A stretch of 63,999 nucleotides of DNA, counting the filler, from Octopus bimaculoides (taxonomy: Eukaryota), in NCBI RefSeq assembly GCF_001194135.2. It is 5 parts of 5 records of this genome, joined end to end, with 100 filler letters (N's around TTAATTAATTAA, not from the genome) between each part and the next. Parts side by side here need not be neighbours in the genome. Positions count along the whole stretch, not along the records: positions 40,168 to 59,031 come from NC_068995.1; 4 more parts are not named here. The stretch is one strand, 5' to 3'. Within the stretch, counting starts at the first letter, position 1; each line of letters starts with the position of its first letter. The notes below the pieces were generated by a model. That model ran no database searches, was not told the DNA's origin, and saw only the letters and a program-made list of their open reading frames with translations. A program made the translations under genes and the position numbers. Positions 4,206-59,031 of this stretch are shown here, one piece after another.

Positions 4206-4950
4206 ATTTCATTTATTTGCCACAGGGTGAAGGATGAGGGGGACAATACAAAGACAGACATAAAGTGTTGGGGTTTACATATGATGAAATGATAAAAAGA
4301 AAAACGATAAGAAAAAAGAAAGTAAGTATACTCAATATACACTGAAAAAGAAGAGATGTATGCATAGCATACAAAGATTAAAAGAACAAAAACAAAAAGT
4401 GGTGGAGAGGATGATAGAGATGTGGCCCACCTGATACAGGAAGGCCTCTAGGAATAATCAAGGAACCCGGCTGTGCGAGATTTCCCTGAAACACCAAGAG
4501 CAAGTGCCCTCTCCAATTCCTTCTCTCCGGCTCACAGGTCAACACTTAAGAGAGGTACCATCCACTTTTGCCATTTTTGCAATTTACCCCCACCTTTTAA
4601 TAAGCTCACCCAAGGACAGCACTTCCCTCTCCACTCTCAATTTTCTTATCAAGTGAAACATGAAGTCAATAAGAGCTCTATCAAAGAGGAATGCTTTTCA
4701 GCCTTGTTCACCAAGCAACCTCTTTCACCACAGCCACCAGGCAAAGGAAAACTTCCTTGCCTGCCCAATTGAAAGGAGGGTGGTGGTGCAGTCATCACAA
4801 GAGACTCGGCCAACAGATGGATCCATCCCACATGTGACTGCAGCTGTTCAACATAACTCCACAAGTCAGCAATGCCTGGACACTGAACAAGGGTGTGTAG
4901 AATGGTTTCATCACTCTGCATGCACCTCAGACAAGCTTATCTGACAATAC
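4206..4950 (-). mobile_element. 5'-truncated Tx1/L1-clade LINE: ORF2 C-terminal CCHC region plus 3' UTR
   Basis: Minus ORF QSDETILHTLVQCPGIADLWSYVEQL matches QSDETVLHALVQCPTISDMWAYAERL of the LINE at about 32830. The 3' UTR ends in CCCTGTGGCAAATAAA followed by an (ATT)n tail. Confidence 0.85.
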
Positions 4951-27718: not shown

Positions 27719-27840
27719 TTTTCTTCCCGCGATCCCTTTTGATCGAAATTATCCCCCCCCCCACCAAGAAAAGCTCTACTTTGTAATTTGTCCATTTTCT
27801 GTATTTAGCCCTGTGTGGCTATAATAAAAAGATATCTATC
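27719..27840 (+). mobile_element. 3' end of an upstream Tx1-like LINE (AATAAA plus (TATC)n tail); the rest is hidden in the gap
   Basis: TTGTAATTTGTCC...CCCTGTGTGGCTATAATAAAA resembles the 3' end of the Tx1 fragment at 4206-4262 (TTGTATTGTCC...CCCTGTGGCAAATAAA). Confidence 0.65.
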
Positions 27841-40054: not shown

Positions 40055-40194
40055 ATATTTCATATATNNNNNNNNNNNNNNNNNNNNNNNNNNNNNNNNN
40101 NNNNNNNNNNNTTAATTAATTAANNNNNNNNNNNNNNNNNNNNNNNNNNNNNNNNNNNNNNNNNNNNTTTAATCTATATTAGAAACTATTATAA

Positions 40195-40340
40195 AAGGCT
40201 GTGAACTGGCAGAATCGCCAGCGCGTCGAACAAAATGCTCAGCGATATTTCTGCCACCTCTTTCTGTTCTGAGTGTAGAAGTCAACTTTACACCCTCCTA
40301 CCCCGGGGCATCGAAACGAATTACCAGTCAAGTACTGAGG

Positions 40341-40345
<5 letters not shown>
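40195..40345 (+). mobile_element. SINE family A, CpG-retaining
   Basis: GAACTGGCAGAATCG...GTTCTGAG...CATCGAAACGAATTACCAGTC. Confidence 0.7.
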
Positions 40346-40415
<70 letters not shown>

Positions 40416-40924
40416 GTACTTGCCCCTCCCCTCAAAATTGCTGGTCTTGTGTCAAAATTAGAAGATTACTTTTATTACTACACACTTATTTCCCAAGCGA
40501 TAGGCACACACGCAAAAACACTGGCTCGCATGTATAGATAACATTATTGCTATGCTATAACTATTGACTTAATTTCAAGTTAAATTATGCGTGAGTGTGT
40601 GTCGGATTGTAACCTGACTACAGTCACATATGTGTGTGTATGTGACATATTATACACGAAACTCTGGGATACAAAGAACCGGGATGCTTTCAAATTTTTA
40701 TATATACACATGCAAGCGTGTGTGTATATAGTGAGCGTGTATGCAATATGACTGACTTGATAGGATGGCACCAAAATCTACTACAGTGTGGCCATAAGAA
40801 CCTGGAGATTTCGTGATAGCATTGACCTTTCATCAGTCACGCTGAAGAATTGGAGGCAACTTCAACGATTTTGTTGCGATTCCCTGTCAACAGCTGATGA
40901 AAACACACACGTGTGTGCATAGGA

Positions 40925-41260
40925 GACCCCCTTCGGTCACGAATGACCATGGGATTGCACCTAGAAAGTTACCCTCCGAGGCACAGGTTCGGGCAAGGTT
41001 GTAAATGAAAGACCAGCAACTGTCCGTGCATACCAGCCTCCCCCTCTCCACTCCACCGATGTCGTCCAAGGAAAAGACAAAGGCCGATAGATACAGCTTG
41101 GCACCTTAGACGTCGCAATTCATTTATACAGCTGAGTAAACTGGAGCAACGTGAAATAAAGTGTCTTCCTCAAGAGCACAACACGCAGCCCAGTCCGGGA
41201 TTCGAACTCACAATCTCACGGGCGTAGGTTCGACGCTCTAACCACTGAGCCATGCACCTG
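40925..41260 (-). mobile_element. SINE family F, full-length
   Basis: Reverse complement has head GGCTCAGTGGTTAGAGCGTCGAAC...GAGTTCGAATCCCGG. Homologous to 18370-18690. Confidence 0.85.
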
Positions 41261-41372
41261 TATACATATACAGGTGATATATAACTCATTACTTCTACTG
41301 GTTTCAGTAGTCGATGTGGCCACGCTGGAGCACCACCTTTAGTATGATTGGTTTGTTGTACATATCAATATC

Positions 41373-41595
41373 TATTTCTTTACTGCCCACAAGGGGCTAC
41401 ACACAGAGGGGACAAACAAGGACAGACAAACGGATTAAGTCGATTATATCGACCCCAGTGCGTAACTGGTACTTAATTTATCGACCTGGAAAGGATGAAA
41501 GGCAAAGTCGACCTCGGCGGAATTTGAACTCAGAACGCAGTGGCAGACGAAATACCGCTAAGCATTTCGCCCGGTGTGCTAACATTTCTGCCATA
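41373..41595 (-). mobile_element. SINE family A variant (A-prime) with a Tx1-like 3' tail
   Basis: Family A head and core followed by TTTGTCTGTCCTTGTTTGTCCCCTCTGTGTGTAGCCCCTTGTGGGCAGTAAAGAAATA. Confidence 0.85.
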
Positions 41596-42017
41596 TCAAT
41601 ATCGACGTTTGTATTGTGTTTGAGGAACAAACTAATCTTATGAAGAATATACTATCTGATCGAGAAACCCCAGTATGTTACCGGTACTATATTTGCAGGT
41701 TTACTGCCCCTCATTCCTCCATTTCCTACACGATCACAATCACCGAGGTTGTATCCATCATTGAAGCTCTAAAATCTTGATCTATCACCGTCACTAACTA
41801 TTAAGACGTCTTTTACACTCATCATCATCAGTGACCCCCGTAACTAGCATCCTCACCGGTTCCAAAGCCTCCAACTTCGTTATTACCACCATCTCTAACA
41901 ATACAACAGCAACCACCAGCCAAAACAGACACCACATAAGTCGTATGATATACAAGAAAAGTACATATATTGAAAACACTCTTATGCACAATTTCCTTTT
42001 AATGAAATTGAAAGTTT

Positions 42018-42060
42018 CCCTGCGACTCGTGTTTCACGCCACTGCGATCTTCAGGCGAGA
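42018..42060 (-). ncRNA. Slightly degenerate type I hammerhead ribozyme motif
   Basis: UCUCGC-CUGAAGA-U-CGC(AGUG)GCG-U-GAAAC-ACGA-GUC-GCAGG: intact core and GUC triplet, a U-U mismatch at the base of stem II, and an imperfect stem I. Confidence 0.55.
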
Positions 42061-42689
42061 ACTCCAGTCACAAACTCAGTTTCATTATAAAAACAGAACC
42101 TTCTTACAACTTATATTGAGCACTCTTCTCGTCTGATATAAACCGAAGTACATGTATACACATGTCTATCAGCATTGTTTCCTGTCTCTGGATAGATTGT
42201 GTTTATGACATTCAATTGTACATTAAACTATATAATTATTCGAGGGGTTCATCAGCGAAAGAGCAAAGAGAACCATAAATCTGTGTTGTACATGGCAGTA
42301 AAGGATCTTGTGCGGAAACAGCAAAATCAAAAATGCAAATGCATTCCATTTTTTATGCAAAAATTCTTTAACTGTGATCCGAAGAATGAAATCAAAGTTA
42401 AAATTAACTTTCGGTAATGAGCTGTTAAACTACAGAACAGCGGTTAATAATATTGTTGTTATAACTATTTCTGTATTAGCTGTATTTATTTATCAACGTG
42501 TGCGTATGCATATATTTATGACTATAGCTAGCTACCTGCATACGTATGTATAACTACGTGCACAACTGTTTATAACAGGGTATATATTATATATATAAAT
42601 TATATATTGACGCGCGCGCACGTACACACACAGTTCTGCTACGATTCTTTTGGACTCAATAACATGACTTATTAAAGCAATACTTTTCG

Positions 42690-43090
42690 TTAGCGCGCCA
42701 AGCAAAAAGCTTAACGGTATTTCGTTTGTCTTGACGTTCCGAGTTCAAATTCCGCCGAGGTCGACTTTGCCTTTCATCCTTTCGGGGTCGATAAATTAAG
42801 TAGCAGTTGCGTATTGGAGTCGATCTAATCGAACTACTGCCACTCCCCAAAAATTTCGGGCCTTGTGCCTAGTGTAGAAAAGAAAAGATTTTTCGTTAGC
42901 ACGCCAGGCCAAAAGCTTAACGGTATTTCGTTCGTCTTTACGTTCTGAGTTCAAATTCCACCGAGGTCGACTTCACCTTTCATCCTTTCGGGGTCGATAA
43001 AATAAGTACCTCTAGAGCACTGGGGACGATGAAATCGTCTTATCTCCTCGCTTGAACTTGTTGGTAGTGAGCCAAAATTTGAAACCAATA
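42690..43090 (+). mobile_element. Two tandem SINE family A copies
   Basis: CGTTAGC(G/A)CGCCA...GAGTTCAAATTCC(G/A)CCGAGGTCGACTT..CCTTTCATCCTTTCGGGGTCGATAAA, present twice. Confidence 0.9.
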
Positions 43091-44921
43091 CTTCTCTTGT
43101 CAAATGAAATTATTATTATTCATAATCCGGGAAATACAAATTTAGCTTTCTGAAAAGAATTGGAAAGCTTGCATGACAGTTTTCAAATCCAACAAACGTG
43201 CCTTATAAGTTGGGTGAGGGCTTGGGCCCCTTGGTGTTCAAAGTGATCTAGGATCAGAGAGGTTCCTTGATTCACCCTAGCTGGAGATTTTCCTTTATCA
43301 GGAGGACTGCATCATACAGTTGTTCTGATATTTTCTTCCTACCATTCTTTTCGGCCCCACTCATTGTCCTTGAAATGTCCTCACCCCACTTCAGTGATGT
43401 CCGTGTGGTAAATAAAAGCATTATTATTATTATTATTATTATTAAGGCCGCGAACTGACAGAATCGTTTGCACGCCGGACAAAATGCTCAACAGCATTTC
43501 GTCCGCCTATGCATTTTGAATTCAAATTTCCGGAGGCCAAGTTCGATAAAATTTGAAATTATTTCTACTATCCTCGTTGTCATCATTTTGTAGAAACGAT
43601 TCATTTTTAGCCAAAAATCTTGACATAACTAAAGAGTTGTTCTTACACCTGATTTCATAAATTCCTAAAACTACAGAATCTTTACTGCAGAATGATTACA
43701 GAGTCAAAATTGTAGGGTACTTGATTGAACAATGAAGAATTTTAGCTATACGAGACAGTATCTCTGTGTTATGGGAGGAAATCCACTAAGGATGTACTAT
43801 CAAAATATCAAGTTGAAAATTCGATATAAATAATGTTGATATAATCAATACGATGATCAGAGAAGAAAAGATTGGCTAGACATAAGGGTTTTGTTTAACC
43901 AACCTTCCCATGTCATGTGGTACCCCTCAAAATAAATCCCACTCTCAGCTAAATGCATCAAGAAAATTGGGTCCTCGATTAATTCCCAGAAAAAAAAAAA
44001 AAAAAAGCTTCTGGTCGGATGTACCTTAATGAATACTTGGAGAAAATTGCTCTACATGCGTCTTCCGTAAACGTATGTGAATGATGCCAGTAGTAACAGA
44101 AATGGTAGCAACGCTTGGACCTGTGACCGTTACATCGTGTAAACTTTTAGATATGCTCTTGTCAGTATCGAATTAGGCGTACTCAAGTCCTATAATGTAA
44201 AAAGCTTAGCGGCACCCTCTTAAAAACATTGCACTAAAATGTAACAAAGAGGGAAAACGTTTGCCTTTTATCTGTTACGGGACTTGCATGGATAGCGTGG
44301 AACTAAGATATAGCTCGTTTTGATTATATCTAAATCTTGCGGTGTTTCTTGAATTCCATGAGCGGGAAACGGTGTTAGTTTCAAAACCGTTCGTTGAGAC
44401 AGAGATACAGAAATTCATGATTATGCATATATCCATAGAAGATCCTACACACTTAATCAGTAGCTTCCAGAACAATGTCACCAAGACACTATCATCCTAG
44501 ACAACATGACGCTGTGAAAATAATATACTATAGGAAGGGTTGACCTGGCATAAATATAGAACAATGATGACTGAGTACTTGTACAAACTCTAACCGAAGG
44601 AATTCTGGTGGAAATTTCCAATGGAAAACAACAGATACTAAACCAATAATATACGTGATAAAATAGCTTCGTGCGGATCAAAATTATAAATTTTAGAAGG
44701 CAACAACCCAACAGATATATCTAATTCTTACAATATCAGTGAGGAAAATAATTATAAAGATGGATAGCTGCACAGAAAGTAAGGGTGTCCCTTCTTAGAT
44801 CATGCAGTTTCGTTCGTTACCATCAATCTTCGGTATATGGAGGTTTCAGGACAATAAAACAGTCCTGCTAACATCTTTGCTTCAAAATCAGCCTAAGTGG
44901 AACAGTGAAGAAAGGAAAGAC

Positions 44922-45840
44922 GGAAGAGAAGAAAGAAGAGAGAAAAGAAAGAGAAGAGAGAAAAGAAAGAGAAGAGAGAAAAGAAAGAGAAGAGAGAAAA
45001 AGAAAGAGAAGAGAGAAAAAGAAAGAAAGAAAGAGAAAAAGAAAGAGAGAAAGAGAAAAAGAGAGAGAGAAAGAGAAAAAGAGAGAGAGAAAGAGAAAAA
45101 GAGAGAGAGAAAGAAAAAGAAAGAGAGAGAGAAAGAAAAAGAAAGAGAGAGAGAAAGAAAAAGAAAGAGAGAGAGAAAGAAAAAGAAAGAGAGAGAGAGA
45201 GAGAAAGAAAGAGAGAGAGAGAGAAAAAGAAAGAGAGAGAAAAAGAAAGAGAAAAAGGGAGAGAGAAAAAGGGAGAGAGAAAAAGGGAGAGAGAAAAAGG
45301 GAGAGAGAAAAAGGGAGAGAGAAAAAGGGAGAGAGAAAAGAAAGGGAGAGAGAAAAGAAAGGGAGAGAGAAAAGAAAGGGAGAGAGAAAAGAAAGGGAGA
45401 GAGAAAAGAAAGGGAGAGAGAAAAGAAAGGGAGAGAGAAAAGAAAGGGAGAGAGAAAAGAAAGGAAGAGAGAAAAGAAAGGAAGAAAGAAAGAGGAAGAA
45501 AGGAAGAAAGAAAGAGGAAGAAAGGAAGAAAGAAAGAGGAAGAAAGAGAGGAAGAAAGGAAGAAAGAAAGAGGAAGAAAGGAAGAAAGAAAGAGGAAGAA
45601 AGGAAGAGAGAAAAGAAAGGGAGAGAGAAAAGAAAGGGAGAAAGAAAGAGAAAGGAAGAAAGAGTAAGAAAGTAAGAAAGAAAGAGTAAGAGAGGAAGGA
45701 AGAAAGAGTAAGAGAGGAAGAAAGAAAGAGTAAGAGAGGAAGAAAGAAAGAGTAAGAGAGGAAGAAAGAAAGAGTAAGAGAGGAAGAAAGAAAGAGTAAG
45801 AGAGGAAGAAAGAAAAAAGAGAAAGGAAGGAAGAAAGAGA
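44922..45840. repeat. Polypurine (GA-rich) compound minisatellite
   Basis: No pyrimidine on the + strand from 44922 to 45664. The long K/R/E and F/L/S ORFs here are artefacts. Confidence 0.95.
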
Positions 45841-46499
45841 TTGTGAAAGTGTTTTTCGTCCAACTCGGTGCTCCAGCATGACTGCAGTACAATGACTGAC
45901 AGCAGTGAATGGGTTTTGGTTGGGATCGATCGCTGAAGACTTGAGTCTATTTAACCCGCTATAATCAAGGTTTGGTGATAATTGGTCATCATGGAATCTT
46001 CAGTTGAAATATAAAGCAATTCCTGTGTGTAATTATGAATAGATGTGCGTATGTGTTCGTTTCTTGGTGTCTGTGTACATGAATGAAACCGTGCACACAT
46101 GTGTGCGTGTATATACACGACTGTATGAGCTTGTCAGAGAGAAGAGAGAGAGAGAGAGGGAGAGGGAGAAAGAGAGAGCGAGATAGAGAGAGAGGGGGGA
46201 AGAGACAGTGTGTGTGTGTGTGTTCATCTGTATACGTAGTTCGAAGGCGCACAAACTTATATTTGACAAGATCTACTTGTAAACATTGAGACTCGACAAC
46301 TGTGTCTGTGTGTTCGTCCATCGGTTCTCACACACATCAGTAAGAATTGCACACACACGCAAAGTTTACGTACAACAGGTTCATATAAAGATATGCGGGT
46401 GTGCATTGTGTGTGTGCGCGTACGAATATATATATATATATATACTTTCCGCAACTGCCGTTCTTGTCTGTGTGTGCATCTGCTTTTAATTATATTATC

Positions 46500-47640
46500 T
46501 ATCGACCAATCAGTCTATCAAATTAGTCAGTCAGTCAGTATCAGTCTATCAATCAGTCAGTCAGTTTATCAACCAGTCTATCAATCAGTCAGTCAGTCTA
46601 TCAATTAATCAGTCAATCAACCAGTCAGCCAGTCTATCAATCAATCAGTCAGTCTATCTATCAATCAATCAATCAATCAGTCTATCAATCAGTCTATCAG
46701 TCTATCTATCAATCAATCAGTCTATCAATCAATCAGTCTATCAGTCTATCAATCAGTCTATCAGTCTATCAATCAGTCTATCAGTCTATCAATCAGTCTA
46801 TCAGTCTATCAATCAGTCTATCAGTCTATCAATCAGTCTATCAGTCTATCAATCAGTCTATCAGNNNNNNNNNNNNNNNNNNNNNNNNNNNNNNNNNNNN
46901 NNNNNNNNNNNNNNNNNNNNNNNNNNNNNNNNNNNNNNNNNNNNNNNNNNNNNNNNNNNNNNNNNNNNNNNNNNNNNNNNNNNNNNNNNNNNNNNNNNNN
47001 NNNNNNNNNNNNNNNNNNNNNNNNNNNNNNNNNNNNNNNNNNNNNNNNNNNNNNNNNNNNNNNNNNNNNNNNNNNNNNNNNNNNNNNNNNNNNNNCAGTC
47101 TATCAGTCTATCAATCAATCAGTCTATCAATCAATCAGTCTATCAGTCTATCAATCAATCAGTGTATCAATCAATCAGTCTATCAGTCTATCAATCAATC
47201 AGTCTATCAGTCTATCAATCAATCAGTCTATCAGTCTATCAATCAATCAGTCTATCAGTCTATCAATCAATCAGTCTATCAATCAATCAGTCTATCAGTC
47301 TATCAGTCTATCAGTCAATCAGTCTATCAGTCAATCAGTCTATCAGTCAATCAGTCTATCAGTCTATCAGTCAATCAGTCAATCAGTCTATCAGTCAATC
47401 AATCAATCAGTCTATCAGTCAATCAGTCTATCAGTCAATCAGTCTATCAGTCAATCAATCAATCAGTCTATCAGTCTATCAGTCTATCAGTCTATCAGTC
47501 TATCAATCAATCAGTCTATCAGTCTATCAGTCTATCAATCAATCAGTCTATCAGTCAATCAGTCTATCAATCAATCAGTCTATCAATCAATCAGTCTATC
47601 AGTCTATCAATCAATCAGTCTATCCATCAATCAACCAATC
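46500..47640. repeat. Compound (ATCA/GTCT/GTCA)n tetranucleotide array spanning an N gap
   Basis: Repeating TCAGTCTA / TCAATCAA units. Confidence 0.95.
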
Positions 47641-47659
47641 TACCTACCTACACATTCTT

Positions 47660-47820
47660 TTATTCTTACTTGTTTCAGTCATTTGACTGTGGCCATGCTG
47701 GAGCAACCACCTTTAGTCGAGCAAATCGACCCCAGGACTTATTCTTTGTAAGCCTAGTACTTATTCTATCGGTCTCTTTTACCGAACCGCTAAGTTACGG
47801 GGACGTAAACACACCAGCAT
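47660..47820 (-). mobile_element. SINE family D
   Basis: Reverse complement: ...CCGATAGAATAAGTACTAGGC...GGGGTCGATTTGCTCGACTAAAGG...CCAGCATGGCCACAGTCAAATGACTGAAAC. Confidence 0.75.
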
Positions 47821-48226
47821 ACAGAAAAAAAAATACAGGGACAACTGCGTTGTGGGCCATACAAAAAAAAAGCAATGCATTAAAGCCTTCGCAAGTCACA
47901 ACACAATTTAACACCGGGTCCCAAGACCCGTTCGTCCTCAGATGATCAGGTCTTAAGAGGGTCCTCTTTCTTGGCAAAGCGCGCGCACGAACACACAAGC
48001 GCGCGCGAATGCGTGAATATTACGTGCGCCCATGTTTTTTTTTAAGATTCAGATCAACCTATGATCAAAGACCTTCCATTCGTGACCTTCCCATATTTGT
48101 TTACTAATATTTTGCATCAAAGTTTATTATCTTATGTGTTGTTGTTTTGAAAAATAAGGTGTGATATCAGCGACATCTGAATGAGTGTTTCGTGCATGTA
48201 TGTTCGCGTGCGCGCTCGCGCGCGTG

Positions 48227-48262
<36 letters not shown>

Positions 48263-48974
48263 TGTTTAACCTCGTCGGAAGTCTACTTACAATAACCTCA
48301 CCCTACCAACTCTACATATTTACATACACACGTATTTATACATACACATATACAAGCACAGTATATGTACACACACACACACACACACGATACGTATACA
48401 TACATACATGCATGCATACATACACCCACTACACACACGAATTCTAAGAGGAAATAAGTGCAAACACTGCTCCTGAACTGAATGAACTTTTGCGCATCTC
48501 CCGCCAAATCCTGCAATGCTAGCCTTCTCAAACAAACTCCTGAAAATCCCTTAGCTGAGCTATTATGTTGAGGGGCGAACCTACGCTGCAGAAAATCAGG
48601 ATAGAAAGAAAACAAATAGCATCAATACCTAAAGATGGAAGTATTTGACAGACAGGTCGCTTGCGTAATTGAGATTGTAATGCTCTGCTCTATGGGCTCT
48701 GTCATAGAATTTTATGCTTTTCCTTATGGACGGAAGATCTCAAATGAAAGAACATTAACATTTGAACAAAATAAAGCGGTTATGTGATTGGGATTTGGCT
48801 GTTAATTGCAGATGCATCTTTCAACAAACTTGTCGACATGTAGTGGAAGATACTACCATGTGAAAATCGGTAGAAACCTCGACTTTCAGAGAATCACTTA
48901 AGAAGATTGAACACCTGCTCAATCTCCCGGTGTCAAAGATCAGTAGTCGCTTTCAAATGAATATATATATATAT

Positions 48975-49013
<39 letters not shown>

Positions 49014-49298
49014 TATTACTCCCCATCCTCAATACCTTGCTTTAAAAAATAACACCTCCGAAACAGATGTAAGCGAATGAAAAGTGATTACGTAACACCC
49101 GTTCGCTTGTCATTGGCGAACATTACGTTCTGAACTGATAATTTGATTTATGAGTTCGGAACTTAATATTAGGACTACTGAATTCTAACAACTGGTTATT
49201 GCTATAGCTAGGGTAAATCATTTTTTACTTCTACACAAGCCTTGTCTCTATGCCGTCTCATCGCCATAAGGTAGGTGTGTGTGCACACACACACTGCC

Positions 49299-49503
49299 TG
49301 TGTCATTTACGTTCGGTCGCCAATTGTCGACAGCTCTTCTGCTGTTGACACCATCAAATTGAAAAATCTTATATAGATAAAGACACGAAATAGTCACGAT
49401 TTTTGGACAGTAACTTATGTACGAGGGATATGTCCATGCCCGATCATTTGTCGTCTTTGGCGCAATCTCTCCCTCTCTCCCTCTCTCCCTCTCTCCCTCT
49501 CTC

Positions 49504-49541
<38 letters not shown>

Positions 49542-49681
49542 ATTTACGTTCGGTCGCTAATTGTCGGCAGCTCTTCTGCTGTTGACGCCATCAAATTGAA
49601 AAATCTTATATAGATAAAGACACGAAATAGTCACGATTTTTGGACAGTAGCTTATGTACGAGGGATATGTCCATGTCCGAT
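49299..49681. repeat. Direct duplication of about 145 bp of unique sequence (period 237)
   Basis: TGTCATTTACGTTCGGTCGC...GGGATATGTCCATG.CCGAT occurs at about 49301 and 49538 with few substitutions. Confidence 0.9.
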
Positions 49682-50494
49682 TTTTCTGCACGGTCATTTG
49701 TCGTCGCCCTTGGCAATTTCTAACTCACACACTCACACACGGTTTTTAACTTGGCAATGATTTTGAAGCTTCATTGCCTTCGAGTTGTCAAACCTATATA
49801 GAATTCTAGGGTTTATATTAGTTTAACTTGGATAAGAAACCTGTTTGGATGTATAAATCCATCAGGCGAGAGAAGTGTTTGAAAGTAATATATAAAGTGA
49901 GTATGATTCAGTAATGAAAGAATATGTTTGCAGTATTGGGCAAGATTTAAATTGAAAGAAAAAAAAAACCCCAAAAAGCAACGAACACCGCAGAAAGCGA
50001 GAATAGGTAAAAGCTTGAAGAAATTAGGGGGAAAGATATACAAGGAGCAGGGTAGACTGAAGGCAGCAGAAAATGGGGTGTCGCCCTAGGTCTTTGGTAC
50101 TTTAGGACCCCAGGTTACTTGTTCGGGATATTCCAATTATACAAATGGATAAAATGAAAATAAATATTTTATTACTACATTTAGTAAGTTGAAATATACG
50201 CCTCAACATTTGCAGTTTTTATGAGCCAAAGAAAAACATTTGCAACCAGATAGTTTGGGGTTTAGTTCTACTGCATGGTGTCTTGAGCAGATGTCTGGTA
50301 AGTGAATTTGATAGCACATCGAATATAGAAGGCGTGCTCGGGCGCACGTAATCTCACCACTTAACAGGTGCTGGTTTGTTTAAACCGTAGTCCGTAAGTC
50401 GGTGGTTCGGGAACTGAGAGCAGACTACAGAAAAAGTCAGTAAGGCGATGTTGCAGCATATGTGCAGACCAAGAATTGACACCATTAAAAGAAT

Positions 50495-50919
50495 CCCTTA
50501 GCGGTATTTAAACTCCGAACGTAAAGTGTCGAAAGAAAGGTCGCTAAGTATTTTGTCCGACACGCTAACTATTCTGCCAGTCCGCTAACTTAAAATATAT
50601 TTTCAAATTTTGGAACAAGGCCAGCAAGTTCAGGGGAGTTAGGCAAGTTTAGGAAGTGACTGTTAAATTTTTCCTTGTAAAAACGAAAATGTTAGTATTC
50701 TGAAAGGAATTAAGTGTCCTTTCAATTTTATGCCTTGCTTCTGTGTGAATACAAACACGCCCACAGACATTGTATATAAAAGAAAGAAGTTTGCAGCCAG
50801 AGTCGCCCTAACACACGAACACATTGGGAAGTTGTCTCAGGATCTGATGGATCTAGAGGCTCAATTCTGATCAATGTATGCTGTAGCTTGCTGTCAATAC
50901 TCTAGGGCCTTGTGCATTG

Positions 50920-50950
<31 letters not shown>

Positions 50951-53900
50951 TATGAGGTCTCCACGAGTCTAGGGGTCCAATTCTGACCTGCTTTTTGTCG
51001 TCAATAAATATATACATCAGTGCACTGATTTGTCCGTGGGCCCATAATGATGTTAGGACGGTCCTGATGGCAAGCATACGTAAGAGAGAGAAAATACCTC
51101 TAGAAATTAATGGATAGATAAACTATCAGAAGCAAAATAATAAACTACTGAAGGGAGAAAAATAGTTAGAATTTATCTTTCACTTGTTTCAGAACTTTTA
51201 CCGAACAGTTAAGTTGCGGGAACTTGAACAAACGTTTTTATTATCGGTCAGTAGTGATGCGATGAACATGAAAAAAAAAAAAAAAGAAAAAAAAACGCGA
51301 CCGAATTCCGTACAATTTCTGTCAGGCAAACTTATTTACAAGGTATCAGTCGACTAGAAGATATTGTAGAAGACATTTGCCTAAGGTGCCGGGCAGTGAC
51401 AATGGACCAACCCGAAACTGGCTGGGTGCAAACAAAGCTCCTTCACCACACACATATACCAGTGTTAGAGACCATACAGACAAAAAAAAGAAAAAAAAAA
51501 AGGCAAGACTAAAATCTGGCGGTAACTGTTTCCAATAGACTAAGAACNNNNNNNNNNNNNNNNNNNNNNNNNNNNNNNNNNNNNNNNNNNNNNNNNNNNN
51601 NNNNNNNNNNNNNNNNNNNNNNNNNNNNNNNNNNNNNNNNNNNNNNNNNNNNNNNNNNNNNNNNNNNNNNNNNNNNNNNNNNNNNNNNNNNNNNNNNNNN
51701 NNNNNNNNNNNNNNNNNNNNNNNNNNNNNNNNNNNGTACTACTAAAAAGCCTTTAATGAACGTTATTTTGCTCGTAAAATTAGGTATTTCGGAAGGTCCC
51801 GCAGGCTGCAGTTGGTCCCTAATTGCGATAGAGGGTTCAATTTTAAGTGTTGGAGAGGTGGGGAATAAAATTAAAGGGAGATAAACAAATGGTTTACGTA
51901 TTTACTTATCAAACTAGTAGCATCCAGATTAAAAAAAAAAAAACATACAGTATTTTTGGAACGAGAAAGTGTTTCGAGAAATGTGTGTGTGTGTGTGTGG
52001 GGGGGGGGTTGTTTTTCGGGGAAAACGAAGGAACATTTTGGGCGAGTTCTGCGAAATTGTATGAAAAGATTAGATATGTTTGTAAATAAATTATATAATA
52101 TAAATTGTTTGTTTGTAGATATATACGAAATATATGGCGTTGGTAAATGAATAAATAATATGGCGTTAATATATAATATCTTAAGTATATATGCGTGCAT
52201 AAAATGTAATATTTATGAGTGTTTGTAAACATATAAAAACTATAAACATGTATATAAATAAGAATAGCACTTAACGTATTTTTTAAAAGTTTAAATATTA
52301 GAGTGGGGTGAACGAAAGGCGTTTATGAAAGTTAAAGGTTTTGTGTTTCTTTTTTTACGCCAACAGAATGCTTCCTTCACGAGAAAAGAGTAAAATGTTT
52401 ATGTTCAAAATACATAGAACATAAAATATAAAGTAAATTGAAAAACCTATACAAAACGTATTAAACTTTTCACATACTATTAACCACAAGCATACAAAGG
52501 TACACCAAGCAACATGCATCCATGTGTTTCAATAAAATCCAAATCTACTGAACGAAAGGATTCACATCTGTTCAAATAAATAAAGTGGCCCCCACGTATT
52601 TGAACACGCAATCATCGGTGTATATAATATTTAAACACCCACGTTCAACTAAGATAAATTCGCTCACAAAGAAAGCTAGAAACGTATTCTCACGAGCAAA
52701 ACTAAAACCCACATGTGCTCACTTTCATTTGCCCACTTAATATATAAATATATAAGACGAATGAAAAAATATATATAATGTAAAAACGTACCCTCTTCGA
52801 TATGAGAATTCAAACATTTAAACATTAAAATATAATCACACACCTTATTGTATGCCTTCTAAGCTTCCAATTTCTTCAGGTTTTCTCTCCTTTCTGTAAT
52901 TGGTTTGCCTGGTTCCAATTCTGTTTTCCTTACCTTTTTTTTTTGTTTCTGCTTTTTTAAAGATACGATTTTTACGAACTCCCCCAGATCAGATCAGATA
53001 ATCCTCAATTTACCAATAATTACAACATAACTCTTCCTTTTATATATTCTCTTCCTTCAACCACTCCTCTCACCTCTCGCAATCAATTATCCAATCGCAA
53101 GCTTCTTCCTCTCTACCCAACAAATTAATTTTTCTAAACTTTAATACAGAACTATGTTCTACCGGAAGTGGTGAAACTTCGAAATCACTGCCAACTTTAA
53201 AAGTATAAATAAAAATATTTCGAGTCTACTTCTGTATTTAGTACTTTCTCAGTACACGTTTTGTATATATAGTGACAGACATATGAATAGATAGATAGAT
53301 ATATCATGCAAGCATGCATATGTAGCATGCGTTCATACATGCATGCACGAATCTTTCTCATTCACCTTGCTTTAAAATAATCATTAACGTTGCAGGCAGA
53401 AGCGAAATTGGTGGACCGATTAGTCGATTGAATCGAACGCAGTATTTGACTGGTACTTTATTTCATCGATCCCACAGCGATGGAAACCCTGACTAGATCT
53501 CGCTGCTATTTGAACTCGGAACTGAAAATGTCGGAAGAAATACTTCAAAACGTTTTGTACTCAAGTCCTCGTGAACTAAAGAAACCATAAAAGAAACGGA
53601 GATATACCCTGTAGCGGATGACCTTAAGAATGAAGATTCAGAGCAGAAAGTCTAAATTTTAGGCAGTAAAAGCCATTTAAGGGCTTTCTTCTCGGACAGT
53701 GTAAAAAGGAGAAAAAGCCAGCAATATGAAAGTGCAGGGGCTACAAGTCCTAAGACATGACGACGGCGTAAGGAAATAGTGGGTGCATGTATGGAATCAC
53801 CGTAAAAGACCATCTTGTCCTCATTTGCAAGAGCTAAGCAGGAGAGCCTTGAAGTACTTCACCGAGGAACAAACAAAGGCGGCAATAGAAAGATGGTGTG

Positions 53901-55180
53901 TCCTATAGCAAGGGCAGAAAGCGAAATATCAGAAAGCTTCACTTCATCATTTACAATAGCACCACCCCATCAGATAGCCTTGTGTGAAGTTTAACAATCG
54001 CTATTAATTGATGATTTGAAATAAAATTACTAGTAACAGAACAGAAATATATTTAAATATTACAAATTTCCCTGTGCGTTAAATATGAATGTAAACGCAC
54101 TCTTTCTATACTACTAATATTTGGAAAAAGAACAAGGGAATCTCTTGACGGATCACTTTACGGTTTGCTGACCGCTCCTCAGAGAAGACATACTCAGCTT
54201 TCCCAATCAAGAGAATAGGTTAGCCGCTATATAAAGTAGTCATAAATTATGCTAGCGCTGGTGAATAATCTAATTTATATTTTGAATTTTTGACAGCTCA
54301 TCATTGATTAGTTCTAGTTTTTATTCACGTTGTGTTGTGCACAAATAGATATAGTTTATTTAATGATAGCTGGCAGTCGTACACCTACTGCAAGCAGGCT
54401 GTCGACCATGGTGATAGCCTTAGTCAAGACTGCATTATATTGTAGCTGGGCCATGCTATTGAATGTGAGAGGAAGCCGTGTACTTTTAAGAGAATATGAT
54501 GAAGGATGAATTCTTGTAGAGTCGATAAAATAAAGAGCACTCAAATAATGTGATCAATTTGACCATCAACATCCAACCCGTATCAGATAATATGTGTGGT
54601 CTTGAACGAATACCTCAGAAATCATTATCAAATGATTAGACCTTTATTTCCTTCCTTTCGCAATGCTTGTAACCAACATATCTAGCCACAACACACCGCC
54701 TAATGCCAAAACCTCACTGATAAGCTCCGTTTATCTGTCAGTATAACCACTTTACAACTATGATACTTACCGTTCATGGTTCACATACAAGGTGAGCAAT
54801 CTCTGCAAAGTTTTTTCAGCTTCGTCTGCAAAATAGCTGTAATAGAGATAAACTGATACCAAGATAAATTAAAATACATTGACTATTCCATTAACTATCA
54901 AAGGATATATAGTTGTATAACCTTGTGTTATATTAGACTTCAAAACTATGACTTTGTGTTTATATTTGTTTTTCAAAAGTTTCTGATATAGGCACGAGGC
55001 GAATAATTTTGGGGTGAGCAGTAAGTCGAAAACATAGACCCCCAGTATATAATTTTATTGACCCGAAACGATGAAAGGCAAAGAAGACCTCGCGGAGATT
55101 TGAAATCAGGATGCAAATTAATGGAACAAATGCCAAAAAGGTATTCTATCCCAACGCTCTAACGATTCTGCCAGCTCTTT
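50495..55180 (-). mobile_element. Three dispersed, diverged SINE family A copies (50495-50640, 53395-53570, 54985-55180); the span is not one element
   Basis: Family A motifs. Diverged, but several CpGs are still retained. Confidence 0.65.
54771..54836 (-). CDS. Candidate internal coding exon of an unidentified host gene (66 nt, phase 2-2; YFADEAEKTLQRLLTLYVNHE)
   Basis: Acceptor tttatctctattacag, consensus donor CG|gtaagtat, length a multiple of 3, open and protein-like frame, unique sequence. Confidence 0.6.
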
Positions 55181-55396
55181 ATTCTAGAATAACTAATCAA
55201 TAAATAATAATTCTTTCTGATTTAGGGACACAACCAGCGATTTCCAGGGAAGAGGGTTAACCGATCACATCAATACAAATTAATTGACTGGTGCTTTATT
55301 TTATTAACACCTGTGGAATTTGAACCCAGAATCTACAGTTTCTGCCAATACACACCACCCTAATAATAATAATGATGATGATGATGATAATGATGA

Positions 55397-57460
55397 TCTT
55401 TTATATTAGTTACAGAAACTCGAAGAGATACAAGACACATTGAACAGGAACTTATAAAGACGAGCACAAAAAATCACGCGGAAATACATTACGAAATATG
55501 GCAAAAGCACACAATAATTAAAGGGAAATATTTATATATAGAAAAAGTGTAACCCTTCAGTTAAGTTGATTAGGGTGTTGCACGTTCATATAAGGATTTT
55601 ATCGTGCGACCACTCTATAGTGTTCGTGGTTGGAGATTTCGAACTCTTCAGCAAAGGAGTGCTTGTGTTCTGTTGGGCAAGTGAGGGTGCCACATGTTCC
55701 AGATCCTCAAGATATAATACTTCGTAAAGTCCATCTCAGATTTGAACCATTATTCTTTCGTTTTTAATTCTGTTTAGGATGTGATTCCGTTTTCCTTCTA
55801 GATCCGTATTTTGATTAGATCTTCACTGCTCTAGCGAATAGGTTGGAAATTCCATTTCGTCCCGAACAGATGGGGAGTGACTTGTTTCTCCTCACAGGAC
55901 ATTTGTTTCTCCTTCACAAGTTGAGTGTTTTTTTCTACGGAGGAAGAGTTTTCCTTGGAGATCTACACGGCCTCGCCTTATTAAAAAAGTTTTTTTTTTT
56001 TTTAGCTGGTTTTCATATTTTCCATTGATTCATTTTATTTAATTTTGAGGAAGTGTGCCTCTACTCCTCACCTCCGTCTGTTCCCCATCCTCTTAAGTAG
56101 ATAGGATGGTGTTACTTTGAGGGTGTACATCCTGGTCGTTCAGCGTTAGTTACTGTTGTTGTAAATGACTTTTCTTGTCTTTGGTGGTTGTAGTTGGGAA
56201 AAGTGGGTTTTGGGTTATTCGGGTCGTTCCTGGTTGGTTTGTTCACATTACTCCGTAAGGACCATATGGCCGTTTTCTCGGTTTCTCTGGCGTATATATT
56301 CCCCTCCCTGGACGAAACACCGGTCCATCACAAGATTACTCATTTTTACCAGCCAACTGGACTGGAGCAGCGTGAAATGAAGTGCTTTGCCCAAGAACAC
56401 AACACGTCGCTCTTTCCAGGAATCGAAACTACGACCTTACGATCATGAATTTAACACTCTAACCACTAAACCATGCACCTCCACCGGACGGGTAAATTTC
56501 ATTTATCGGCTGGTGTTATCCTCGGATTGAAAACATACCTGATTTGTTGCTGTTTTTGTTCTGTTGGACTTTCTATCCTAGAAACGTTCAGAGGGGATTT
56601 GCTGCACTTTTGTAAGAGAATGGTAGAATCGTTTACCCTGGATGTTGAGCTTTAAGACCTTCTTCTCGACACCTTCTACATGACACAGTTATGGTATCCT
56701 TTTGTGAACTCGCGGGATCTATGGATTCTTATATATCCATGGTGATCTCATTCAACCACATTTCACGAATGTTACATTTGCGATGACGACCGGCGTATGT
56801 TATACCACGAAGGAGAACAAAAGTCCAGAGCCGACTTTCTCATCGATATATCTGACGGCAACCCTTGTGTATATTCTTCTTAAATACTGTGGAGCATTCT
56901 GTTTTCTGTTTGTGAAAGGTATTATTTTGTACATTTTCAGTATTTCTTTCAGTCAGAGGCGTGGAGTGGGGAACATCTTCTTGGCCAATTTCTTAGGAAA
57001 TGTGAAAGACAAAAATTAAATTTTGTCCCAAAATGAAAAAAACCCCCAGCTGTTTCGTGGATCGGGTCAGTTGGAACTCACGTCCTCATAACCGACCAAG
57101 TGCCAATCTGTGTGTGTGTTTGTGTGAGAGAGTATTTGTTTGTGTGTGTGTGTGCGTACATGAGTTTGCGTGCGCGCGCGCGTGCTTGAATGTTTGTGTA
57201 TTTGTGTGTGTCTGTTTGTATGTGTGTGCATTTTTTTTTGTGTGTGTGTATTTGTGTGTGTGTCTGTGATGAAAAGTAACTGGTTTTGGGTAGATGAAAA
57301 TACAGGAGGATCAGTTAATTATGATTTTATTCAACATATGCTCCTCTCAGATCCACACACTTATTGCAGCGGTCCTCCAGTCTTTCTAAGCCCTGTAAAA
57401 GAACTCGGAAGGTCGGGTCTCCAACCAGGCCTTTCGCGGCGAGACCCTTAAAGACAAGAA
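55397..57460 (-). mobile_element. Degenerate Tx1-related element with ORF1 remnants and a tailed 3' end but no ORF2; SINE F inserted at 56250-56490
   Basis: Minus-strand remnants LAKKMFPT, PQYLRRIYTRVAVR and EDLIKIRI-KENGIT resemble IARGKIFAT, TYLGRRVTKVK and SDLMQYIRSKTNIT of the 28-30 kb ORF1. It ends AATATAAAAGA(TCA)n about 200 bp after the ORF1 remnants. Confidence 0.45.
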
Positions 57461-57489
57461 CTTTTCAGCAACCCCCCCCCCCGTACACA

Positions 57490-57532
<43 letters not shown>

Positions 57533-57609
57533 GCACACTCATACATACATAGATTCATACATATACACACACATTCATACACACATACATATTCAACGGG
57601 TTTGCATAC

Positions 57610-57860
57610 AGTTTCTTATTTCTTATTTCTTTACTGCCCCCAAGGGGCTACACACAGAGGGGACAAACAAGGACAGACAAACAGATTAAGTCGATCATAT
57701 CGACCCCAGTGCGTAACTGGTACTTATTTAATCGACTCCGAAAGGATGAAAGGCAAAGTCGACCTCGGCGGAATTTGAACTCAGAACGTAACGGCAGACG
57801 AAATACCGCTAAGCATTTCGCCCGGCGTGCTAACGATTCTACCAGCTCACCGCCTTGCAT
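57610..57860 (-). mobile_element. SINE A-prime (Tx1-like tail, (AAGAAAT)n end), near-consensus
   Basis: Nearly identical to 41373-41595, with full head GGCGGTGAGCTGGTAGAATCGTTAGCACGCCGGGCGAAATGC. Confidence 0.9.
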
Positions 57861-58129
57861 ACAGTTTCTATCTACCAAATCCACTCACAAGACTTTAAAT
57901 CGACTCGGGGTTATAATAGAAGACTCCTACTCAACGTACTGCGCAGAGAAATTGAACTCGAAGCCACTTCATTGCAAAGCAAGTTGCCTAACCACTCAGT
58001 CATGTATATAAATAAATCTAAATCTTCTCTAGCATTAGTTCATATGAAACGACTACAATACCTCGGTTTGAACCTGAGTCTCAATAGATTAAATGCCGGG
58101 ATATTATTCTTATTATTATTTACCTTTAG

Positions 58130-58500
58130 TGAAGGCGGTGATATGGCAGAATCGTTAGCACGCCGTTCTGAGTTCAAATTCCGCCGAGGTCGACTTTGCC
58201 TTTCATCCTTTCCGGGTCGATAAACTAAGTACCAGTTGCGTACTGGGGTCGATCCAATCGACTGGCCCCCTCCCTAAAAAATTCGGGCCTTGTGCCTGGA
58301 GTAGAAAAGATTCGTTAGCACGCCGGGTAAAAGGTTTAACAGCATTTTGACAGACTTCACGTTCTGAGTTCAAATACCGCGAAGGTCGACTTTGCCTTTC
58401 ATCTTTTCGAGGTTTCTAAAATTTGTACCAGCTGAGCACTTGGGTTCATGTAATCAGCTTTACCCCTTAGCCCGAACTTGCTGGCCTTGTGCCAAAATGG
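58130..58500 (+). mobile_element. Two tandem SINE family A copies
   Basis: GGCAGAATCGTTAGCACGCCG...GAGTTCAAAT(T/A)CCGC...GGTCGACTTTGCCTTTCATC, present twice. Confidence 0.9.
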
Positions 58501-58980
58501 GAAACAAATAATTACCGTTAGTCACACTAATCCGCTGTTTACTTCCTGATTAACACGAATTCAGTTTTAGTCATACCCCCGCTGGATTATATTTCGGAAG
58601 AACTCGCCTAAGTCACCCAAATCGAGAACACTGATACGTGTAGAATACGTAACTGGTAACTGGTTAGCTGATGTAATTAATAATATATCTACTGTTGGGA
58701 CTAGTCGAGGGGTAGCGGTGAGAGGAGACACTAGAGGAGATTAGGCTGTGTGTGGGATATTTCATGCGAACAGGCTAATAGACGAATGTTTGTGTGTAGA
58801 GAGAGAGGCAAATAGAAAGAAAGATATATAGATAGATTGACAAATATAGAGATAGAAAGATAGATAAATATATTATTGTTACATAGATTGATAGACAGAT
58901 AAATAGATAGATAGAAAGATATGATGACCAGGAATACACGCCTGCGCATATATATGCATATATACATAAATACATGCATT

Positions 58981-59031
<51 letters not shown>

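What the first reader, a model, noticed from the sequence alone, without database searches (positions are those of the whole stretch)
41373..41431. SINE subfamily whose 3' tail matches the 3' end of a Tx1-clade LINE: candidate Tx1-dependent SINE
Seen: two SINE copies (41373-41595 and 57610-57860) end in TGTCTGTCCTTGT-TTGTCCCCTCTGTGTGTAGCCCCTTGTGG.GCAGTAAAG. The Tx1 fragment at 4206-4262 ends TGTCTGTCTTTGTATTGTCCCC...CCCTGTGGCAAATAAA (20 of 22 columns identical in the first block). The LINE end at 27779-27834 has TCTGTATTTAGCCCTGTGTGG (17 of 21 identical to the SINE). Other family A copies in the window have different tails (CCTTGTGCCTA.AGTAGAAAG or GCCAAAATTTGAAAC). Established: many SINEs borrow the 3' end of a partner LINE, mostly from the CR1, L2 or RTE clades, while mammalian L1 recognises only poly(A). 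Inference: this subfamily swapped tails and is mobilised by a Tx1 element that recognises its own 3' end, which is an uncommon pairing.
Basis: partly seen in the sequence, partly recalled or inferred. Interest (0 to 1): 0.75.

Follow-up and report, generated by a model that had tools for sequence, protein, structure and literature searches.

The report
Octopus SINE subfamily with swapped tail
Two copies of a common octopus short mobile element carry a different 3' end from their relatives, which is a real and ordinary case of module swapping; which larger element (Tx1 or another) copies them could not be tested here.

Summary
The piece is octopus DNA. The two elements are real retrotransposed copies of one SINE subfamily, here called A'. 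They lie on the minus strand at 41372-41592 and 57617-57854, with target-site duplications of 10 and 15 bp.

They share the head and core of the other family-A copies. After ...ATCGACTTAAT they switch to a 62-68 nt tail that ends ...GGGCAGTAAAGAAATA(AG), with 1-3 AAGAAAT units and no poly(A). Seven more A' copies were found in 80 kb of Octopus vulgaris and O. bimaculoides DNA. The last ~42 nt of the tail also sit on a different SINE head, so the tail is an exchangeable module.

The Tx1 part could not be tested. Four LINE 3' ends of three kinds in that sample (one RT+PHD type, two CR1-like copies, one Dong/R4-like) do not match. The tail has no significant predicted stem-loop, and the insertions show no shared target site.

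A Tx1-dependent SINE is already known in crocodilians (SINEU). Verdict: an ordinary mosaic SINE subfamily whose partner LINE is unresolved. I put Tx1 at about 20%.

The parts
41372..41592 (-). A' SINE copy 1, 221 nt, 5'-truncated by about 12 nt, 95.5% identical to the 9-copy consensus
41372..41433 (-). Subfamily-specific tail of copy 1 (sense: CCGTTTGTCTGTCCTTGTTTGTCCCCTCTGTGTGTAGCCCCTTGTGGGCAGTAAAGAAATAG). This is the region the finding points to.
41362..41371 (.). Target-site duplication ATATCAATAT at the 3' side of copy 1
41593..41602 (.). Target-site duplication ATATCAATAT at the 5' side of copy 1
57617..57854 (-). A' SINE copy 2, full length (238 nt), 96.1% identical to the consensus, inserted inside a copy of another SINE family (C)
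57617..57684 (-). Subfamily-specific tail of copy 2, ending GGGCAGTAAAGAAATAAGAAATA. A third AAGAAA(C) unit overlaps the TSD.
57602..57616 (.). Target-site duplication TTGCATACAGTTTCT at the 3' side of copy 2
57855..57869 (.). Target-site duplication TTGCATACAGTTTCT at the 5' side of copy 2
42681..43095 (+). Dimeric family-A SINE used for comparison: left monomer ending ...GGGCCTTGTGCCTAGTGTAGAAAAG, joined to a right monomer ending ...GCCAAAATTTGAAAC
58127..58500 (+). Second copy of the same dimeric family-A SINE, with the same junction; the left monomer has an internal deletion

Best explanation
The finding is the 3' module of a subfamily (A') of the very abundant octopus tRNA-derived SINE that repeat annotators class as tRNA-Deu.

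An A' element is about 235 nt long. It has a pol III-type head with a B-box-like GAGTTCAAATTCC, the conserved core ...GTCGACTTTGCCTTTCATCCTTTCGGGGTCGATAAATTAAGTACCAG..., and then a 62-68 nt tail in place of the tail carried by the other family-A elements.

The copies are ordinary products of target-primed reverse transcription. They are flanked by 10-19 bp target-site duplications. Some are 5'-truncated. Some form head-to-tail pairs, one of which is enclosed by a single duplication.

Every copy ends at the same defined sequence, ...GGGCAGTAAAGAAATA(AG), with one to three AAGAAAT units and never a poly(A). I therefore infer that the enzyme copying them starts at a specific 3' sequence supplied by the tail (a 'stringent' LINE partner), not at a poly(A) run. 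The module was gained or exchanged by recombination or template switching between repeats; which form is ancestral is not shown.

Shown: the subfamily, its boundaries, the duplications, the defined 3' end, and reuse of the last ~42 nt on another SINE head.

Inferred: dependence on a LINE and recognition of the tail. The identity of that LINE is unresolved.
For: - The tail is present only in the two copies within the piece, against 0 expected by chance.
- The family-A body is shared, and the divergence point is sharp.
- Nine copies occur in the piece, in O. vulgaris L001/L002 and in O. bimaculoides L003, 88.6-96.2% identical to their consensus.
- A degenerate copy also occurs in a Logan read assembly (L004).
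- TSDs are 10, 15, 18 and 19 bp, and one 18-bp duplication encloses a tandem pair of a full and a truncated copy.
- The 3' terminus is uniform and has no poly(A).
- The same last ~42 nt follow a different SINE head at L002 2271-2440.
- Literature: octopus SINEs are dominated by tRNA-Deu and tRNA-Core families (PMC8967140). Mollusc SINEs exchange LINE-derived tails in a mosaic fashion (PMC11481361).
Against: - No autonomous element carrying this tail was found, so a LINE origin of the tail is an inference.
- The tail has no predicted structure beyond shuffled controls (z = -0.15). The best-studied stringent tails have a stem-loop.
- ARAGORN and Rfam find no tRNA in the head, so the tRNA origin rests on the literature and on reading the B-box.
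- The second head carrying the tail is a single example.
- Only four insertions have unambiguous duplications.
Confidence: 0.8

Rival explanations
1. The tail was taken from the 3' end of an L1-Tx1 clade LINE, and that Tx1 element recognises the sequence and mobilises A'.
For: - L1-Tx1 is abundant and recently active in O. vulgaris: 56 Mb, 80 families, 421 recent insertions (PMC13282606).
- Long duplications of 10-19 bp fit an AP-type endonuclease such as that of L1/Tx1. This rests on my own knowledge.
- The A-rich end contains AGTAAA and AATAAG, which resemble polyadenylation signals.
- The sampled RT+PHD, CR1-like and Dong/R4-like LINE 3' ends do not match the tail.
Against: - No Tx1 sequence could be compared, and no tail-bearing LINE end lies in 99 kb.
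- There is no shared insertion target among seven events. Most characterised Tx1 elements, including the SINEU partner, are target-specific (PMC4494074).
- There is no poly(A) and no stem-loop.
- O. vulgaris has hundreds of LINE families in RTE, CR1 and Dong-R4 alone, so excluding one family of each says little.
Confidence: 0.2
2. The partner is a LINE of another clade present in octopus (RTE, CR1, L1 proper, Proto2, I or similar) that ends in the same sequence and AAGAAAT repeats.
For: - Short tandem repeats at a defined 3' end are typical of RTE and CR1/L2-type partners. This rests on my own knowledge and on PMC6007223.
- RTE, Dong-R4 and CR1 are each more abundant than L1-Tx1 in O. vulgaris.
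- The partners known for mollusc SINEs are CR1, CR1-Zenon, L2 and Nimb (PMC11481361).
Against: - The one RT+PHD, two CR1-like and one Dong/R4-like 3' ends seen in the sample end in (TGA)n, (ATT)n and (TAA)n and share nothing with the tail.
- The four clear duplications do not show the RTE signature of a T start about 10 nt after a T run, though n = 4.
- CR1-type insertions usually make short duplications or none (my own knowledge).
Confidence: 0.5
3. The tail was not taken directly from a LINE. It was assembled from pieces of other octopus SINEs, and only the short A-rich terminal repeat matters for priming.
For: - The segment GTCTGTCCTTGTTTGTCCCCTC resembles the TG-rich segment that follows the microsatellite in family-C SINEs.
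- The family-C terminus AAGTAAAAGAATAAAAGA resembles the A' terminus AGTAAAGAAATAAGAAAT.
- The motif CCTTGTG recurs in several SINE tails: 8 matches in the piece against 1.7 expected.
- The tail shows no structure.
Against: - The similarities are short, low in complexity and individually weak (best nhmmer E = 0.23).
- The 42-nt terminal block is conserved as a unit on two different heads, which suggests selection on more than the last few bases.
Confidence: 0.2

Closest known systems
Mosaic SINEs of molluscs with conserved central domains and exchangeable LINE-derived tails (Matetovici 2016, PMC4758252; Martelossi 2024, PMC11481361)
   Same: A tRNA-type head, a conserved central domain and a tail that differs between subfamilies. 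The same tail also appears on SINEs with different bodies.
   Different: Those studies cover gastropods and bivalves, and the partners they found are CR1, CR1-Zenon, L2 and Nimb. For this octopus tail no partner has been identified, here or in the papers I could read.
UnaSINE1 / UnaL2 of the eel, the model of 'stringent' 3'-end recognition (Kajikawa and Okada 2002, cited in PMC4494074)
   Same: A defined non-poly(A) 3' end with a few short tandem repeats. The inference is that the enzyme recognises the tail.
   Different: UnaL2 recognition needs a conserved stem-loop (my own knowledge). This tail folds no better than shuffled sequence. No shared LINE tail was shown here.
SINEU families of crocodilians mobilised by Tx1-Mar LINEs (Kojima 2015, PMC4494074)
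   Different: The SINEU case rests on a shared insertion target (a Mariner transposon) and on shared snRNA-derived 5' ends, not on a shared 3' tail. SINEU has an snRNA head. A' has a tRNA-type head and no common target among seven events.
Octopus SINEs OK, OR1 and OR2 (Ohshima and Okada 1994, cited in PMC4824008 and PMC4758252) and the 'tRNA-Deu' SINEs of octopus repeat annotations (PMC8967140, PMC13282606)
   Same: Same animals and the same kind of element. Family A is very probably one of the annotated tRNA-Deu families.
   Different: I had no reference sequence for any of these, so identity with a named family was not tested.

Membership tests
SINE (non-autonomous, LINE-dependent retroposon) | Short, non-coding, many dispersed copies | tested here: met
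   About 235 nt. Nine copies in 99 kb from two octopus species, plus one in a read assembly. Every sense frame stops inside the tail.
SINE (non-autonomous, LINE-dependent retroposon) | Target-site duplications, 5' truncation | tested here: met
   Duplications of 10, 15, 18 and 19 bp. Four of nine copies are 5'-truncated.
tRNA-derived SINE (SINE2) | Head recognisable as a tRNA with A and B boxes | tested here: inconclusive
   ARAGORN finds no tRNA and Rfam finds no tRNA match. A B-box-like GAGTTCAAATTCC is visible by eye. Published annotations call octopus SINEs tRNA-Deu or tRNA-Core.
Deu / Nin-DC SINE superfamily | Central domain homologous to the Deu/Nin-DC consensus | not testable with these tools
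   No reference consensus was available. The resemblance of ...TTTCATCCTTTCGGGGTCGATAAATTAAGTACCAG to Nin-DC is from memory only.
SINE with a LINE-derived tail (stringent type) | Defined 3' end without poly(A), with short terminal repeats | tested here: met
   All nine copies end ...AGTAAAGAAATA(AG), with 1-3 AAGAAAT units.
SINE with a LINE-derived tail (stringent type) | A LINE in the same genome with the same 3' end | tested here: inconclusive
   None in 99 kb (nhmmer). Four LINE 3' ends in the sample do not match. The sample is far too small to exclude a partner.
SINE with a LINE-derived tail (stringent type) | Conserved 3' stem-loop | tested here: not met
   Minimum free energy -8.8 kcal/mol against -8.4 +/- 2.4 for shuffles, z = -0.15.
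Tx1-dependent SINE | Tail homologous to the 3' end of a Tx1-clade LINE | not testable with these tools
No octopus Tx1 sequence could be fetched. The public DNA collections on hand hold no octopus DNA.
Tx1-dependent SINE | Insertion-target preference shared with the Tx1 partner | tested here: inconclusive
   The seven insertion events have unrelated flanks. Three lie in or next to family-C SINE copies, but at different positions and orientations. Not all Tx1 elements are target-specific.
Tx1-dependent SINE | Activity at the same time as the partner | not tested
   Needs genome-wide age profiles.

The most novel reading that the evidence does not exclude
A' and the second SINE head that carries the same last 42 nt are mobilised by a non-target-specific L1-Tx1 family of octopus that recognises a specific 3' sequence rather than poly(A). 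That would be the first tRNA-type SINE shown to borrow a Tx1 tail, and the first SINE-LINE partnership assigned in a cephalopod, where SINEs make up about 12% of the genome.
Probability: 0.2. Interest if true: 0.55.

Novelty: new member of a known kind. Interest (0 to 1): 0.3.

Why it matters
SINEs are about 12% of octopus genomes, and their expansion is specific to octopuses. Yet none of the papers I could read names the LINEs that drive them.

A tail shared by two SINE heads is a direct handle for finding that driver. If the driver is Tx1, it would add a rare example of sequence-specific 3' recognition in the L1/Tx1 group of animals. If it is RTE or CR1, the case is routine.

As it stands, this is a clean but ordinary example of module exchange between SINEs.

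Tried and rejected
1. Looked for a LINE ORF in the piece. There is none; only SINEs, microsatellites and a mariner-like remnant.

2. Scanned JGI metagenome contigs, GTDB genome contigs and IMG/VR contigs for the tail and for the SINE core. All six scans gave 0 hits, so these collections hold no octopus DNA.

3. Searched the supplementary transcriptome of PMC9115989 for tail and core strings. There were 0 hits even for the very abundant core, so that text search probably does not work on sequence lines.

4. Protein route to octopus DNA.
- A SINE-derived ORF gave only three annotated octopus proteins.
- An octopus RT+PHD LINE ORF returned only non-octopus relatives among the 120 rows shown. In hindsight the query was too long: short octopus fragments rank below long foreign hits.
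- A chimeric query of SINE-derived peptides gave one usable octopus protein.
- Two UniProt-only proteins were not on record.

5. Asked whether a LINE ORF ends inside the tail. The frame-1 tail peptide, searched against 1.84 billion representative proteins, hit only one SINE-derived ORF (P0128).

6. Pfam and PDB searches to name the sampled LINE fragments. Only RVT_1 and a sub-threshold PHD-finger match (21.1 bits against a cut-off of 24) were found for one of them. The labels 'CR1-like' and 'Dong/R4-like' are my reading of motifs and of the terminal repeats.

7. Checked the RTE insertion signature of PMC6007223. It is not seen, but n = 4.

8. Rejected the idea that the small hairpin GCCC-CTTGT-GGGC is a recognition structure. 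It is not in the minimum-energy fold, and the fold is no better than shuffles.

Full report
WHAT THE PIECE IS

Places 40168-59031 are AT-rich animal DNA full of microsatellites and short repeats. A SINE-derived reading frame from the piece finds only octopus proteins: two 'hypothetical predicted proteins' of Octopus vulgaris and one of O. bimaculoides. The loci fetched through such proteins, L001 and L002 from O. vulgaris GCA_951406725.2 and L003 from O. bimaculoides GCA_001194135.2, carry the same repeats. The piece is therefore octopus genome. It holds no LINE reading frame.

THE OBSERVATION

The 25-mer TGTCCCCTCTGTGTGTAGCCCCTTG occurs exactly twice, at 41390-41414 and 57641-57665 on the minus strand, against 0 expected. 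The 21-mer TGTCTGTCCTTGTTTGTCCCC finds only these two places even with three mismatches allowed.

Aligned with six other copies of the family in the piece, the two elements share the head and the core GAGTTCAAATTCCGCCGAGGTCGACTTTGCCTTTCATCCTTTCGGGGTCGATAAATTAAGTACCAG.... They part from the rest sharply after ...ATCGACTTAAT.

- Copy 1 is 41372-41592. It lacks about 12 nt at its 5' end and is flanked by ATATCAATAT on both sides.
- Copy 2 is 57617-57854. It is full length and is flanked by TTGCATACAGTTTCT on both sides.

They are the internal linker (...GGGCCTTGTGCCTAGTGTAGAAAAG) and the true end (...GCCAAAATTTGAAAC) of one dimeric element. That element is present twice with the same monomer junction, at 42681-43095 and 58127-58500.

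A REAL SUBFAMILY

Seven further copies with the same tail lie in the 80 kb of O. vulgaris and O. bimaculoides DNA I could fetch. A degenerate one lies in a read assembly (L004). The nine copies are 88.6-96.2% identical to their consensus of about 235 nt. The two window copies are 95.5% and 96.1% identical to it.

Clear target-site duplications measure 10, 15, 18 and 19 bp. The 18-bp one encloses a head-to-tail pair made of a full copy and a 5'-truncated copy, which points to template switching during a single insertion.

Every copy ends ...GGGCAGTAAAGAAATA(AG), with one to three AAGAAAT units and never a poly(A).

At L002 2271-2440 the last ~42 nt of the tail (CCTCTGTGTCTAGCCCCTTGTGGACAGTAAAGAAATAAGAA) follow the head of a different SINE family. 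The terminal block therefore behaves as an exchangeable module. This fits the mosaic evolution described for mollusc SINEs (PMC11481361; PMC4758252).

THE TX1 CLAIM

I could not obtain any octopus Tx1 sequence.
- The DNA collections on hand contain no octopus DNA: six scans with the tail and with the SINE core returned nothing.
- The three protein searches gave only four octopus loci.

A profile of the tail, run with nhmmer over all 99 kb, finds the nine A' copies and the second-head element, and nothing else above noise.

The LINE 3' ends that do occur in the sample do not match the tail:
- A LINE with RVT_1 and a weak PHD-finger match (21.1 bits, below Pfam's cut-off of 24) whose long repeat-rich 3' region appears, from other copies, to end in (TGA)n.
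- Two CR1-like copies ending in (ATT)n.
- A Dong/R4-like element ending in (TAA)n.

These clade labels are my reading of motifs and are not confirmed by a database. O. vulgaris has 176 RTE, 169 CR1, 80 L1-Tx1 and 51 Dong-R4 families (PMC13282606 supplement). Excluding one family of each clade therefore says little.

Tests that could be run from the SINE side are neutral or mildly negative:
- The tail has no predicted structure beyond shuffled controls (z = -0.15).
- The seven insertion events share no target. Three lie in or next to copies of the other abundant SINE, but at different positions.
- The frame-1 peptide of the tail finds no LINE protein among 1.84 billion representatives.

The long duplications and the A-rich end fit an L1/Tx1-type enzyme, but they fit others as well. 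I put the Tx1 reading at about 0.2.

HOW IT MOST LIKELY WORKS

A pol III transcript of the element is copied into nicked DNA by the reverse transcriptase of a LINE. That enzyme starts at the defined end ...GUAAAGAAAUA(AG). The start of each duplication shows some microhomology to the repeat; for example, AGAAAC follows AGAAAT in copy 2.

The insertions and their defined end are shown. Dependence on a LINE and recognition of the tail are inferred from what is known of such SINEs. The partner is unknown. Which of the family-A tails is ancestral is also not shown.

COMPARISON AND NOVELTY

Tail exchange between SINE subfamilies is well known. A Tx1-dependent SINE is also known: SINEU in crocodilians, argued from a shared insertion target and shared 5' ends (PMC4494074). 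In bivalves the known partners are CR1, CR1-Zenon, L2 and Nimb.

No paper I could read assigns partners to octopus SINEs. The subfamily is therefore a new member of a known kind, with a modest open question attached. The decisive step is a genome-wide search for tail hits that are not on a SINE body, followed by classification of the upstream reading frame.

Noticed in passing
window 42681-43095 and 58127-58500: Family-A SINEs occur here as a fixed dimer. A left monomer ends ...GTAGAAAAG(A) and is joined at the same point (TTCGTTAGCACGCC) to a 5'-shortened right monomer with a different tail. The same junction is present in both copies, so this is a dimeric family, not two chance neighbours.
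   Followed up: partly
L002 10226-10647 (O. vulgaris): A full A' copy is followed directly by a 5'-truncated A' copy, and the pair is enclosed by one 18-bp duplication (GATAATGACAGTAATCAA, 1 mismatch). This looks like template switching from one SINE RNA to another within a single insertion. A similar pair lies at L002 5668-6123.
   Followed up: partly
L002 2271-2440 (minus strand): The head of another SINE family (C) is joined to the last 42 nt of the A' tail. It is a single example, and no clear duplication was seen.
   Followed up: partly
window 47667-47820 (minus); L001 5771-5954; L002 8738-9071; L003 26678-27052: The long family-C SINE ends ...ACTGAAACAAGTAAAAGAATAAAAGA. This A/G-rich repeat end resembles the A' end AGTAAAGAAATAAGAAAT. 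The two families might use related partners.
   Followed up: partly
window 41388, 42861, 50908, 53978, 54921, 56863, 58288, 58485: The heptamer CCTTGTG occurs 8 times against 1.7 expected. At least four of the eight lie about 15-25 nt from the 3' end of SINE monomers that have different tails.
   Followed up: partly
window 40930-41260 and 56260-56490 (minus strand): Two copies of a second SINE family whose middle resembles the CORE domain (...GTGCTCTTGAGGAAGACACTTTATTTCACGTTGCTCCAGTTTACTCAGCTGTATAAATGA). This is probably the OR-type CORE-SINE reported for octopus. I recognised it from memory and did not test it.
   Followed up: no
L002 17273-18751; also L002 3565-4182 and L003 from about 35364: A LINE with a reverse transcriptase followed by a weak PHD-finger match, and a 3' region built of about 170-bp tandem repeats. 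Its closest listed protein relatives (50-60% identity) come from a hydroid, lancelets, a clam and many marine metagenome contigs, which suggests a very widely spread lineage.
   Followed up: partly
window 44900-45840; 46500-47640: A purine-only compound microsatellite of about 0.9 kb, and an array of more than 1 kb built of CAGTCTAT/CAAT units that is interrupted by an assembly gap.
   Followed up: no
window 49297-49440 and 49541-49690: A stretch of about 150 bp (...tcatttacgttcggtcgccaattgtcgacagctcttctgctgttgac...) is present twice about 245 bp apart, separated by (CT)n and (TG)n runs. This is a local tandem duplication.
   Followed up: no
window 57330-57464 (minus strand): An open frame ending ...LERLEDRCNKCVDLRGAYVE looks like the C-terminus of a mariner-type transposase. 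I recognised it from memory and did not test it.
   Followed up: no
L004 (Logan SRR11869391 contig, 1130 bp): The read-assembly part of the protein collection does contain octopus-like contigs with called ORFs. A short octopus query should therefore reach octopus LINE fragments, which my long query missed.
   Followed up: no
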